Shown: in pieces, positions 29,546 to 32,099 of the stretch
Layout of the letters: every line of letters starts with the position of its first letter
How positions within the stretch are numbered: position 1 is the stretch's first letter
Assembly: GCF_016433145.1 (NCBI RefSeq)
Contig: NC_058133.1
Span: forward strand, 275,601,643-275,665,430
Origin: Gracilinanus agilis
Lineage: Eukaryota
Direction of reading: 5' to 3'
DNA length: 63,788 bases
Notes under the pieces: model-generated
What the model saw: the letters and a program-made list of their open reading frames with translations, nothing else
What the model was told of the DNA's origin: nothing
Databases searched by the model: none
Position numbers and translations under genes: made by a program

Positions 29546-29864
29546 AAAGACCAGTAATGTATGGGGGAGGGGGACAGGATCTGAGTTGAAACTCCTATAC
29601 TGGGCAAACACTGTAGAGAATGAACCTCAAATAACAGGATTTTCTTTCTGGGGTTACCACTTCCCACTTACCCAGGCTCCTGCAACCCTGACTCCTTAGA
29701 CCTCTGGGTTTGGTATCTGATTTTCATACCCTCTGGTGGCAGTATCCTCCCTCCATAACAAAACAGAACTGGATTAGGTGGCAGAACTGCATACTCCACT
29801 TGGGTCCTTGGTGTTGTTTCAGGGCTGGTGGCGAGGACAGGGCCAGGGGCAGAGCACAGTGATC

Positions 29865-30001
29865 CTAAGAGGCTGTAAACTTGCGCTGAATGCGCTTGTA
29901 ACGGAGCAGCTCCTGCTCAGAGACAGACGGCTGTAGCCGGGCAGCTGCCTGGACCAAGTCTTCCATAGTAAGAAGCAGCATGGAATTAGCTGGCTCTACT
30001 C
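29865..30001 (-). CDS. PEX6: PEX6 exon 17 (last)
   Basis: cccag| [48 protein letters not shown]; 137 nt. Confidence 0.97.
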
Positions 30002-30664
30002 CTGGGGATGGAGGAAAAGAAAAAAGGAAGGTCAAAGAAGAAAGTCCTTGCTCCCTCTCAACTACAGCTGACAGAGGGGAAGGAAAGGAGGAAGGACTAG
30101 AATTTCAGTTGCCCTAAGAGTTCAAAGCCAACAGAAGGATCTCCAGATATAAAGAAACATGAAGAGAACTTTCCTGCTCAGGGCCTAAACAGGACCTGAA
30201 GACAGGGGAAGGTGGGTACTGAAAGTCTTCTTACTGGAGCACAGAATGGGGAACTACTGTCTTCTAGTTAAACAGGGCTTCCAAAAGGTCATCTTATTCT
30301 CTAGCCTCTGGGCACAATGGTGCCCCAGACTAGCAGCTGCTGGCACTTTAAAAACTTTTTAAAAGCAGGGGCAGCTAGATGACTTGATGGTCAGAGAGCC
30401 AGGGCTGAAGATGAGAGGTCCTGAGATCAAATCTGGGCTTAGATATTTTGTAGCTATGCAAAACTGGGCAAGTCACTTAAGTCCCATCTTTCCTCTGGTC
30501 TATATCTAGTAATTTTCCTCCTAGTTTTCTGTTTTCTAAGCTTGATGTCTTCATTTCAGCTTGCTGAGGTTCATGGGCAGCACTTGGGCTGTGGTTCATC
30601 CTGCCTGCTAGGGCCTTTCTCTTGATTCCATTGAGCCTAGGGCTGGGGAAGAGCCTATCCTCAC

Positions 30665-30804
30665 CATCTTCTATATCCTGGACCTTTCGTTTGAGTGCTG
30701 CTGTCATTGCATCAGTACAGAGGGAGTACAAATCAGCACCAGTCAGCTGGGTTGGGCATCGATCCAGGACACTCGACAGGTTCACAGAAGGCTCAAGCTT
30801 GAAC
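30665..30804 (-). CDS. PEX6: PEX6 exon 16
   Basis: [46 protein letters not shown]; AG/GT; 140 nt. Confidence 0.97.
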
Positions 30805-31054
30805 CTGGAATGGAGAGATTGGGTGTGGGATGGGCTTGGTAATGAGAGGATGGTCATAGTTTTGGAAAACAATCTATTTCTGGAATTAACCCCTGGCTCT
30901 CCAAAGGCTATCACTGACCAGCAGTATGTAGTAGATGAGGAATTCAAAACCACGTCCTTTTAAGGTCAAATCTGGAGCACTTCTCATTATATCAGTACCA
31001 AAGTGGCTCATCCAAGCACTAACCTTAACTATCCTACATCCCCTTAGGCTATAC

Positions 31055-31245
31055 CAGTGATTCCCAAAGTGGGCCCCACCGCCCCCTGGTGGGTGCTGCA
31101 TCGATCCAGGGAGGTAGTGATGGCCACACTTTTTTTGTATTACATTCTATTCTGAGTTCAATGAATAGTTTCATAATTTCCAGGGGCGCTAAGTAATATT
31201 TTTTCTGGAAAGGGGGCAGTAGGCCAAAAAGTTTGGGAACCACTG
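31055..31245. mobile_element. 191-bp hAT MITE in PEX6 intron 15
   Basis: TIRs CAGTGRTTCCCAAA (13/14); perfect 8-bp TSD GGCTATAC at 31047-31054 and 31246-31253. Confidence 0.93.
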
Positions 31246-31253
31246 GGCTATAC

Positions 31254-31331
31254 CTTCGTGTGATGGCACTTAGAATGCGAAGCTGGGAAGCCCGATCCTC
31301 ACTTGGCCCCACAAACACCAGTTTATCAAAC
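31254..31331 (-). CDS. PEX6: PEX6 exon 15
   Basis: [25 protein letters not shown] |gtatag; 78 nt. Confidence 0.97.
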
Positions 31332-31596
31332 CTTTAGAGAGAGCAAGAGAAGGCAGAAGTCAGGGTAAGGTAGCAAGGGAAGAGAGTGGGAGCCCAGCCA
31401 AACAGGTGTTCTATTCCCCACCTCCATGGGCCAGGCCTGAGCTCCTGGGATGTTAGTAGGCTGGACAAGTTGTCCACTGGCCAGCTGATACCAATTCTAG
31501 ATAAGCCTGGCCCTGAGAGAAAGTGCAGAACAAGATGATCATGGGAAATGAGGAGTAACTGGAGTATATCAGGTTTCTTGAAGAGACAGAAAGCTA

Positions 31597-31767
<171 letters not shown>

Positions 31768-32099
31768 CTAGGGGCAGAGAGCAGCCCCATCCAGAACCCT
31801 TCCCTACTCTTCGGATTAGATTCTTTTCCCATAATTCCAGGTCTTGTTTATGAAGTCTCTTATTCTCATCCCATACTCCTCATCTCCAGGTCCCTTTTGG
31901 CATCTCTTAACCCCTTTCTTTGATCTTCTATGTGGCCTGCAATCCATATTTCTCTCTTCCTCAGTTCTTTACTACAGTATTTTTTTTTAATAACCTAAGA
32001 GAGAAGGACTTCTTTCTGATCTTAAACTGATGGTCCCAGAACTTGACAATGTGCTATCCTTAATCCGTTCCAGGACTCTGGAGAAGGTGTGTTCTGCTA

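What the first reader, a model, noticed from the sequence alone, without database searches (positions are those of the whole stretch)
31047..31254. hAT transposon whose target-site duplication is the PEX6 exon-15 splice donor, open in frame end to end
The first 8 nt of intron 15 (GTATAGCC, 31253-31246) are the TSD of a 191-bp MITE. The donor is therefore duplicated 199 nt downstream as CTG|GTATAGCC (31054-31047), beside the native AAG|GTATAGCC. The exon-15 frame runs through the whole element without a stop ([10 protein letters not shown]...PLWESLV) and ends at the TAG inside the second TSD. Intron retention would replace the PEX6 C-terminus after the D2 arginine finger with ~68 TE-encoded residues. 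Use of the duplicate donor would frameshift exon 16 (VQA-stop), a predicted NMD target. This is a plausible lineage-specific splice switch created by a DNA transposon in an essential peroxisome gene.
Basis: partly seen in the sequence, partly recalled or inferred. Interest (0 to 1): 0.75.

Follow-up and report, generated by a model that had tools for sequence, protein, structure and literature searches.

The report
Jumping-gene relic beside PEX6 splice site
A 191-base cut-and-paste transposon relic landed exactly at the start of an intron of the peroxisome gene PEX6 in one marsupial lineage and copied the splice signal, but the RNA data to hand show only normal splicing, so it is best read as a neat but ordinary intronic insertion.

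Summary
The sequence observation is correct. On the minus strand, PEX6 exon 15 (31331-31254) ends AAG. It is followed by GTATAGCC, a 191-bp element (31245-31055) with 15-nt inverted ends, and GTATAGCC again. The exon frame runs open through the element to TAG at 31051-31049.

New evidence shows a real, lineage-specific insertion. A DNA contig of related organism B skips exactly 199 bp and keeps one copy of the 8-mer, which is a clean empty site. Organism D also lacks the element. Neither genome has any copy at least 80% alike, whereas organism A's transcriptome contigs hold hundreds.

The proposed splice switch is not supported:
- The only spliced contig joins 31254 to 30804, the native junction.
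- No contig uses the duplicate donor or retains the unique part of the intron.
- The duplicate donor is weaker than the native one, ranks eighth among the intron's GT sites, and its CUG sits in the stem formed by the inverted ends.
- The open frame is chance-level: p about 0.04 per frame, one of six frames open, no homologue.
- Many other copies carry +1 indels or a different centre.

The element also carries the window's only exact CTCF core motif. Earlier notes of this scan describe such a MITE family elsewhere in this genome, but not this PEX6 case. Low-level use of the duplicate donor cannot be excluded, because only assembled contigs were available.

The parts
31254..31331 (-). PEX6 exon 15 (78 nt; ...[25 protein letters not shown] + AG), part of the D2 AAA domain just after LLRPGR
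   Evidence: RNA contig joints at 31613>31331 and 31254>30804; translation; weak PDB match to PEX6; neighbouring exon matches Pfam AAA positions 82-123
31246..31253 (-). Target-site duplication copy 1 = native donor positions +1 to +8 (GTATAGCC)
   Evidence: D4; native junction used in RNA
31055..31245 (-). 191-bp non-autonomous hAT-type element (MITE)
   Evidence: Inverted ends (I2), subterminal inverted repeat (I3), other copies ending at 31055 and 31244/5 and hundreds of look-alike contigs in organism A, exact 199-bp absence in organism B
31231..31245 (-). 5' terminal inverted repeat CAGTGGTTCCCAAAC
   Evidence: the same 20-nt end heads many hAT-like elements with 8-bp TA-centred duplications in other DNA
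31055..31069 (-). 3' terminal inverted repeat (CTTTGGGAATCACTG; 2 mismatches to the 5' one); its last three bases CTG are the -3..-1 of the duplicate donor
31079..31092 (-). Exact CTCF core motif CCACCAGGGGGCGG inside the element, the only exact match in the window
   Evidence: 1 match; 0.01 expected by chance
31047..31054 (-). Target-site duplication copy 2 = duplicate donor GTATAGCC; contains the in-frame stop TAG (31051-31049)
30805..31046 (-). Original remainder of intron 15 (whole intron 31253-30805 = 449 nt, 250 nt before the insertion); holds a higher-scoring unused cryptic donor AAG|GTTAGT (exon side ends 31024)
30665..30804 (-). PEX6 exon 16 (140 nt; G + FKLEPSVNL...QDIED), AAA lid
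   Evidence: RNA joints 31254>30804 and 30665>30001; Pfam AAA_lid_3 E 1e-5; PDB PEX6 E 9e-5

Best explanation
A short non-autonomous hAT-type transposon (MITE) inserted into PEX6 intron 15 in the lineage of organism A, after that lineage split from organisms B and D. The staggered 8-bp cut began exactly at the exon/intron border. Repair therefore left an intact copy of intron positions +1 to +8 next to the exon and a second copy 199 nt downstream. Because the native donor (-3 to +8) was preserved, splicing carried on as before. The element is removed with the 449-nt intron, and the insertion was tolerated as a neutral or nearly neutral change. The duplicate donor and the open frame through the element are by-products without demonstrated use. 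Shown: the anatomy, the family, the empty site and the native junction in RNA. Inferred: neutrality, and negligible use of the duplicate donor.
For: Anatomy: 13/15 inverted ends and a perfect 8-bp duplication. Family: 252 and 916 contigs of organism A's two RNA-like runs lie on the stretch, mostly on the element, most 90-99% alike, with ends at 31055 and 31244/5. Empty site: organism B contig record 28 skips exactly 31047-31245 with 9 ambiguous letters and nothing between. Organism D contig record 7 has 102 letters where the window has 312. Depth over the core of the element, 31073-31206, is 0 in both genomes, while the SINE at 30366-30487 reaches about 27,000, so repeats are not simply lost from those runs. 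Splicing: X4 contig record 16 (1514 nt, no mismatches) joins 31613>31331, 31254>30804 and 30665>30001; no other joint touches exon 15 or 16. Donor strength: rough PWM 5.2 vs 3.3 bits and U1 duplex -5.7 vs -4.2 kcal/mol. The duplicate's CUG and first G have unpaired probability 0.00, and the stem of the inverted ends appears in a fold with z = -2.95. Open frame: p 0.036-0.044 by shuffles and 1 of 6 frames open; no Pfam match; no homologue. In other copies, 27-39% of depth carries an extra base at 31225 and about 10% at 31198, and many have a different centre between 31128 and 31184.
Against: Only assembled contigs were available. They drop rare isoforms, and NMD would deplete the duplicate-donor product, so low-level use is not excluded. 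Only two RNA-like runs of unknown tissue were laid, and only one covers exon 15. The native donor is weak (GTATAG, no G at +5), so competition from a nearby identical intron-side sequence is conceivable. The element's CTCF motif could give it an effect that was not tested here.
Confidence: 0.8

Rival explanations
1. Splice switch: the duplicate donor CTG|GTATAGCC is used in some tissues or conditions. It adds 199 nt, shifts the frame (VQA-stop in exon 16) and sends part of the PEX6 output to NMD, giving a lineage-specific dosage control.
For: The intron-side 8 nt of the two donors are identical, and the native donor is weak. The stop lies 128 nt upstream of the exon 16/17 junction, so the NMD rule is met (coordinates). 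Contigs cannot exclude rare isoforms.
Against: No such joint appears in either RNA-like run. The exon side CTG is about 2 bits worse than AAG, and the site ranks 8th among the intron's GT sites. A much better site (AAG|GTTAGT, 8.4 bits) in the same intron is also unused. The CUG is locked in the stem of the inverted ends. The insertion is absent from relatives, so there is no conservation to argue for function.
Confidence: 0.07
2. Intron retention gives a PEX6 protein whose C-terminus, after the D2 arginine-finger region, is replaced by 68 TE-encoded residues.
For: The frame is open from exon 15 through the element. Run X2 shows traces of unspliced RNA elsewhere in the gene: 30001-30172, and 28 nt of intron 15's 3' end at depth 2.3.
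Against: No contig covers the unique intron part 30872-31005 or bridges exon 15 into the element. The stop at 31051-31049 lies upstream of the exon 16/17 junction, so the transcript would be an NMD target. The product would lack the AAA lid and C-terminal helices encoded by exons 16-17. The peptide has no family match or homologue, and the frame is chance-level.
Confidence: 0.03
3. The element matters through DNA rather than RNA. Its CTCF core motif, about 165 nt downstream of the weak exon 15 donor, binds CTCF and slows RNA polymerase II, which helps recognition of exon 15, or it adds an intragenic chromatin anchor.
For: Exact CCACCAGGGGGCGG at 31092-31079, the only match in 63.8 kb. CTCF bound within about 1 kb downstream of weak exons is associated with their inclusion (review PMC8373115). 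Earlier notes of this scan describe a hAT MITE family of about 190 bp carrying this motif in the same genome (leads only).
Against: Binding was not tested. The motif is inherited from the family and was not acquired here. Exon 15 must have been spliced well before the insertion, since relatives lack the element. Gene-body motifs are often methylated and unbound.
Confidence: 0.08

Closest known systems
hAT-superfamily MITEs of mammals and other tetrapods (Charlie/SPIN-like group)
   Same: Ends beginning CAGTGGTTC..., 8-bp duplication with central TA, about 190 bp, no coding capacity, many copies. SPIN-type ends are CAGYGGTTCTCAACCT with target NYYTARRN (PMC3014272).
   Different: The end differs from SPIN at 2-3 of 16 positions, and the interior was not compared. 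No autonomous partner was seen. The family is restricted to organism A among the three genomes laid.
OC1 (OposCharlie1) and its 192-bp MITE OC1_Das_NA in dasyurid marsupials (PMC3621081)
   Same: Marsupial hAT MITE of almost the same length, lineage-specific insertions with clean empty sites in relatives, 8-bp duplications.
   Different: OC1 ends are CAGGGGTCCTCAAACT and its subterminal and internal sequence is unrelated to this element (supplement read). This element is not OC1.
Transposon insertions at splice sites that create alternative donors (for example the maize Ac/Ds and Mu alleles, and Alu exonisation in primates; from general knowledge, not checked in papers here)
   Same: A mobile element next to an exon border offers extra splice signals and can cause frameshifted, NMD-prone isoforms.
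   Different: In those cases the aberrant junctions are seen in RNA. Here only the native junction is seen, and the extra donor is a copy of the host's own site made by the duplication, not a site inside the element.
Repeat-borne CTCF motifs (SINE B2 in rodents and others; from general knowledge, not checked in papers here)
   Same: A mobile element family spreads a consensus CTCF core motif.
   Different: This is a DNA transposon relic rather than a SINE, and binding is untested.

Membership tests
hAT-superfamily non-autonomous element (MITE) | 8-bp target-site duplication | tested here: met
   GTATAGCC at 31253-31246 and 31054-31047, 8/8 identical. A single copy stands at the empty site of organism B.
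hAT-superfamily non-autonomous element (MITE) | Short terminal inverted repeats starting CAG/TAG | tested here: met
   CAGTGGTTCCCAAAC and CAGTGATTCCCAAAG, 13/15.
hAT-superfamily non-autonomous element (MITE) | Target preference with central TA (NYYTARRN for this group of ends) | tested here: inconclusive
   G-T-A-T-A-G-C-C has T4 and A5, also Y2 and R6, but A3 and C7 depart from the pattern. In 49 elements with the same end from other DNA, T4 is found in 46 and A5 in 44. The published pattern is in PMC3014272.
hAT-superfamily non-autonomous element (MITE) | Multi-copy family with the same ends; small and non-coding | tested here: met
   Hundreds of contigs 90-99% alike in organism A's runs, ending at the same borders. 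The element is 191 bp, with no Pfam match and no homologue for its open frame.
hAT-superfamily non-autonomous element (MITE) | Autonomous partner encoding a hAT transposase with matching ends | not testable with these tools
   No other DNA of this genome was available. Elements of 2748 bp with the same end in metagenome contigs have no long open frame.
OC1 / OC1_Das_NA | Sequence match to the OC1 ends and subterminal regions | tested here: not met
   The consensus in the supplement of PMC3621081 starts CAGGGGTCCTCAAACTACGGCCC and has an unrelated interior.
SPIN | Ends CAGYGGTTCTCAACCT and SPIN-derived interior | tested here: inconclusive
   The ends are similar but not identical. No SPIN consensus could be read, because the PNAS paper is not held.
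Regulated unproductive splicing (AS-NMD switch) | The alternative junction is present in RNA | tested here: not met
   Only 31254>30804 is seen in contigs of X4, and no 31055>30804 in X2 or X4. Contigs can miss rare forms.
Regulated unproductive splicing (AS-NMD switch) | Evolutionary conservation of the alternative site | tested here: not met
   The element and the duplicate donor are absent in organisms B and D.
Regulated unproductive splicing (AS-NMD switch) | The isoform rises when NMD is blocked | not testable with these tools
   Needs an experiment or raw reads from NMD-inhibited cells.
PEX6 (host gene) | PEX6-specific N-terminal domains plus two AAA modules | tested here: met
   PF25394 at E 3e-43 and PF25395 at E 2e-44 on exon 1. 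AAA on the exons at 33096-32890 and 31767-31597, and AAA_lid_3 on exon 16. The best PDB matches are PEX6 chains.

The most novel reading that the evidence does not exclude
In organism A's lineage the insertion has become a regulator of PEX6 output. It would act either through conditional use of the duplicated donor (frameshift and NMD) or through CTCF bound to the element's motif just downstream of the weak exon 15 donor. That would be a transposon-made, species-specific control point in a gene needed for peroxisome biogenesis.
Probability: 0.07. Interest if true: 0.5.

Novelty: new member of a known kind. Interest (0 to 1): 0.25.

Why it matters
As it stands, this is a clean textbook example of how an 8-bp target-site duplication can save a splice site. 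The cut fell exactly at the exon/intron border of an important gene, yet the donor survived intact, and an exact empty site in a relative proves the order of events. If the duplicate donor or the CTCF motif proved to be used, it would show a DNA transposon creating species-specific regulation of a peroxisome biogenesis gene, but nothing here points that way. The family is young, confined to one lineage and carries a CTCF motif, which is of modest interest for the history of DNA transposons in marsupials.

Tried and rejected
- SPIN identity: the ends are similar only. The SPIN paper is not held.
- Literature search for the end sequence: no paper holds the 15-mer. A 13-mer gave only an Anolis hAT table.
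- Other copies for a direct test of the open frame: none in the window. The metagenome scan gave more than 120 contigs with the identical 20-nt end but unrelated interiors, and no marsupial SINE. The viral scan gave none. The protein word search with the 68-residue TE peptide gave none. The test of whether the open frame is typical of other copies therefore rests only on the indels and alternative centres reported.
- Rfam scan of 30300-31400: no match, so no known miRNA or other RNA family.
- U12-type intron: considered and rejected by eye. GTATAGCC does not fit the U12 donor RTATCCTT beyond +4, and there is no branch-site match near the acceptor (sequence; own knowledge of the consensus).
- Earlier findings by sequence: blank.

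Full report

Yes. Read on the minus strand, the sequence runs ...ATC ACA CGA AG|GTATAGCC CAGTGGTTCCCAAAC ... CTTTGGGAATCACTG GTATAGCC TAAGG.
- The repeat finder reports the direct repeat GGCTATACC at 31047-31055 and 31246-31254, spaced 199 nt. It also reports inverted arms at 31054-31068 and 31232-31246, 93% complementary.
- The element proper is 31245-31055 (191 bp, 47% G+C). Its ends match at 13 of 15 positions, and a GC-rich subterminal inverted repeat lies inside them.
- The ninth matching letter is the terminal G of the right end, so the duplication is 8 bp.
- Translation from 31333 gives [26 protein letters not shown], then [10 protein letters not shown]...PLWESLV, then a stop at 31051-31049.

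**2. The host gene**

Exons were searched one by one by reference.
- Exon 1 carries the PEX6 N-terminal domain and the PEX6 double-psi barrel (E 3e-43 and 2e-44).
- Exons at 33096-32890 and 31767-31597 match AAA. Exon 16 matches the AAA lid, and the last exon weakly matches a Vps4-type C-terminal helix.
- Exons 15 and 16 find PEX6 chains first in the PDB.
- Exon borders come from RNA, through contig record 16 of run X4: exon 14 ends at 31613, exon 15 is 31331-31254, exon 16 is 30804-30665, and exon 17 starts at 30001.
- Intron 15 is 449 nt. It was 250 nt before the insertion.

**3. Is it a transposon, and when did it arrive?**

One call laid contigs of four public runs on 29800-31800 at 80% likeness.

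X2 and X4 are from organism A, the window's species. They are transcriptome-sized, and X4 holds a contig spliced at three GT-AG introns with no mismatch.
- 252 and 916 contigs lie on the stretch, nearly all on the element and mostly 90-99% alike.
- Many stop exactly at 31055 or 31244/31245 and continue into unrelated flanks.
- This is therefore a multi-copy family with these borders.

X5 is organism B and X12 is organism D. Both are genome-sized contig sets, about 6-9% different from the window in this region.
- Organism B's contig record 28 runs through the locus and skips exactly 31047-31245 (199 nt). Nine letters fit either side and nothing is inserted. This is a clean empty site with one copy of GTATAGCC and no excision footprint.
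- Organism D's contig record 7 has 102 letters where the window has 312 (30937-31248). That length fits the intron without the element.
- Neither genome places a single contig on the core of the element: depth is 0 over 31073-31206. The SINE in intron 16 (30366-30487) collects depth of about 27,000 in both, so repeats are not simply lost from these runs.

The family therefore expanded, and this copy inserted, in organism A's lineage after it split from B and D.

**4. Which family?**

- The anatomy is hAT-like: 8-bp duplication, CAG...CTG ends, and T-A at positions 4-5 of the target.
- It is not OC1. The published OC1_Das and 192-bp OC1_Das_NA consensus sequences start CAGGGGTCCTCAAACT and are otherwise unrelated (PMC3621081 supplement).
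- Its end resembles the SPIN type (CAGYGGTTCTCAACCT, target NYYTARRN; PMC3014272) but is not identical.
- A scan of metagenome contigs found more than 120 contigs with the identical 20-nt end. Their interiors are unrelated to this element and to each other, and they lack the marsupial SINE.
- Forty-nine of those ends have a partner end and an 8-bp duplication with T4 in 46 and A5 in 44.
- The end is thus a widely shared signature of a group of hAT elements. It says nothing about horizontal transfer of this family.
- No transposase-coding partner was seen, so the superfamily assignment rests on ends and duplication only.

**5. Does it switch splicing?**

The evidence points to no, with the limits of contig data.

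RNA evidence:
- The only spliced contig covering exon 15 joins 31254 to 30804.
- No joint from 31055, or from any other intronic GT, appears in X2 or X4.
- No contig covers the unique part of the intron, 30872-31005.
- X2 has only a 159-nt piece that runs 28 nt from exon 16 into the intron's 3' end at depth 2.3, alongside similar unspliced traces in intron 16.

Donor strength:
- The two donors are identical from +1 to +8 and differ only on the exon side, AAG versus CTG.
- A rough matrix, with frequencies typed from my memory of human donors, gives 5.2 against 3.3 bits. U1 pairing gives -5.7 against -4.2 kcal/mol.
- The duplicate ranks eighth among GT sites in the intron. A far better site (AAG|GTTAGT, 8.4 bits, exon side ending at 31024) is not used either.

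RNA structure:
- In the predicted pre-mRNA fold the inverted ends pair (246 nt, -81 kcal/mol, z -2.95).
- The duplicate's CUG and first G are then unpaired with probability 0.00.

Fate of the alternative products:
- The duplicate-donor form stops 128 nt before the exon 16/17 junction.
- The intron-retained form stops at 31051-31049, also upstream of that junction.
- A stable TE-tailed PEX6 is therefore unlikely, and it would lack the lid encoded by exons 16-17.

**6. The open frame**

- Shuffles of the element leave this frame open in 3.6% (mononucleotide) to 4.4% (dinucleotide) of trials.
- One of the element's six frames is open, so the chance that orientation and phase hit it is about 1 in 6.
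- The peptide matches no Pfam family and no protein in the word search.
- Among other copies, 27-39% of the depth has an extra base at 31225 and about 10% at 31198. Many have a different centre between 31128 and 31184, so the frame is not a conserved property of the family.
- A direct count on aligned copies could not be made, because no other copy could be fetched.

**7. How surprising is the position?**

The following is inference from assumed round numbers. Take about 2e5 donors in a 3.2-Gb genome and 1e4-1e5 insertions of one family. Random insertion then gives about 0.6-6 events in exactly this register genome-wide. The coincidence is neat but expected somewhere in the genome. It survives because the duplication keeps the donor whole.

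**8.

- The element holds CCACCAGGGGGCGG (31092-31079), the only exact match to the CTCF core pattern in the window, against 0.01 expected.
- Earlier notes of this scan describe a hAT MITE family of about 190 bp with this motif elsewhere in this genome, and one calls the genome opossum. These are unchecked leads. I confirmed only that this copy has the motif.
- CTCF bound downstream of weak exons has been linked to their inclusion (PMC8373115).
- That is a more documented route to a splicing effect than the duplicate donor, but binding is untested and relatives splice exon 15 without it.

**9. Verdict**

- The transposon reading is supported and strengthened by the empty site in a relative.
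- The lineage-specific claim is supported.
- The splice switch is not supported.
- The finding is a new member of a known kind, of modest interest.

Noticed in passing
window 31079-31092 (minus strand): The element carries an exact CTCF core motif, the only one in the 63.8-kb window. Earlier notes of this scan report such a MITE family elsewhere in this genome.
   Followed up: partly
window 31055-31245, seen in runs X2, X4, X5, X12: The MITE family is abundant in organism A's transcriptome contigs (most 90-99% alike, 120 contigs at least 99% alike in X4). It has no copy at least 80% alike in the genome contigs of organisms B and D, which differ from A by only about 6-9% here. This is a young, lineage-restricted DNA-transposon family; whether its origin is vertical or horizontal is unknown.
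   Followed up: partly
window 31128-31184: Many other copies of the family diverge from this one between about 31128 and 31184 (loose ends at 31128 and 31184; joints 31087>31184 and 31111>31184). The family therefore has sub-types with different centres.
   Followed up: no
loci L001-L120 (metagenome contigs): More than 120 contigs, from a handful of metagenome projects by their contig names, share the exact 20-nt end CAGTGGTTCCCAAACTTTTT. Their interiors are diverse, with element lengths of 159-2748 bp. They have 8-bp duplications of type NYYTARRN. They look like DNA of some non-marsupial eukaryotic host (40% G+C, no marsupial SINE) rich in related hAT MITE families.
   Followed up: partly
window 30366-30487 (intron 16): A SINE copy here collects depth of about 27,000 in the genomes of organisms B and D, and is also common in A's RNA contigs. 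Its flanking consensus (GGGGCAGCTAGGTGGCTCAGTGGAT...) is that of the common marsupial SINE as I recall it.
   Followed up: no
window 31016-31024: A cryptic donor AAG|GTTAGT in the original part of intron 15 scores well above the native donor on a simple matrix, yet is not used in the RNA contig. Recognition of exon 15 must depend on more than donor strength.
   Followed up: no
window 30001-30172 and 30805-30831: Run X2 holds contigs that run from exons 17 and 16 into the adjoining introns at low depth. This is unspliced pre-mRNA, and it explains X2's higher share of the stretch's words.
   Followed up: no
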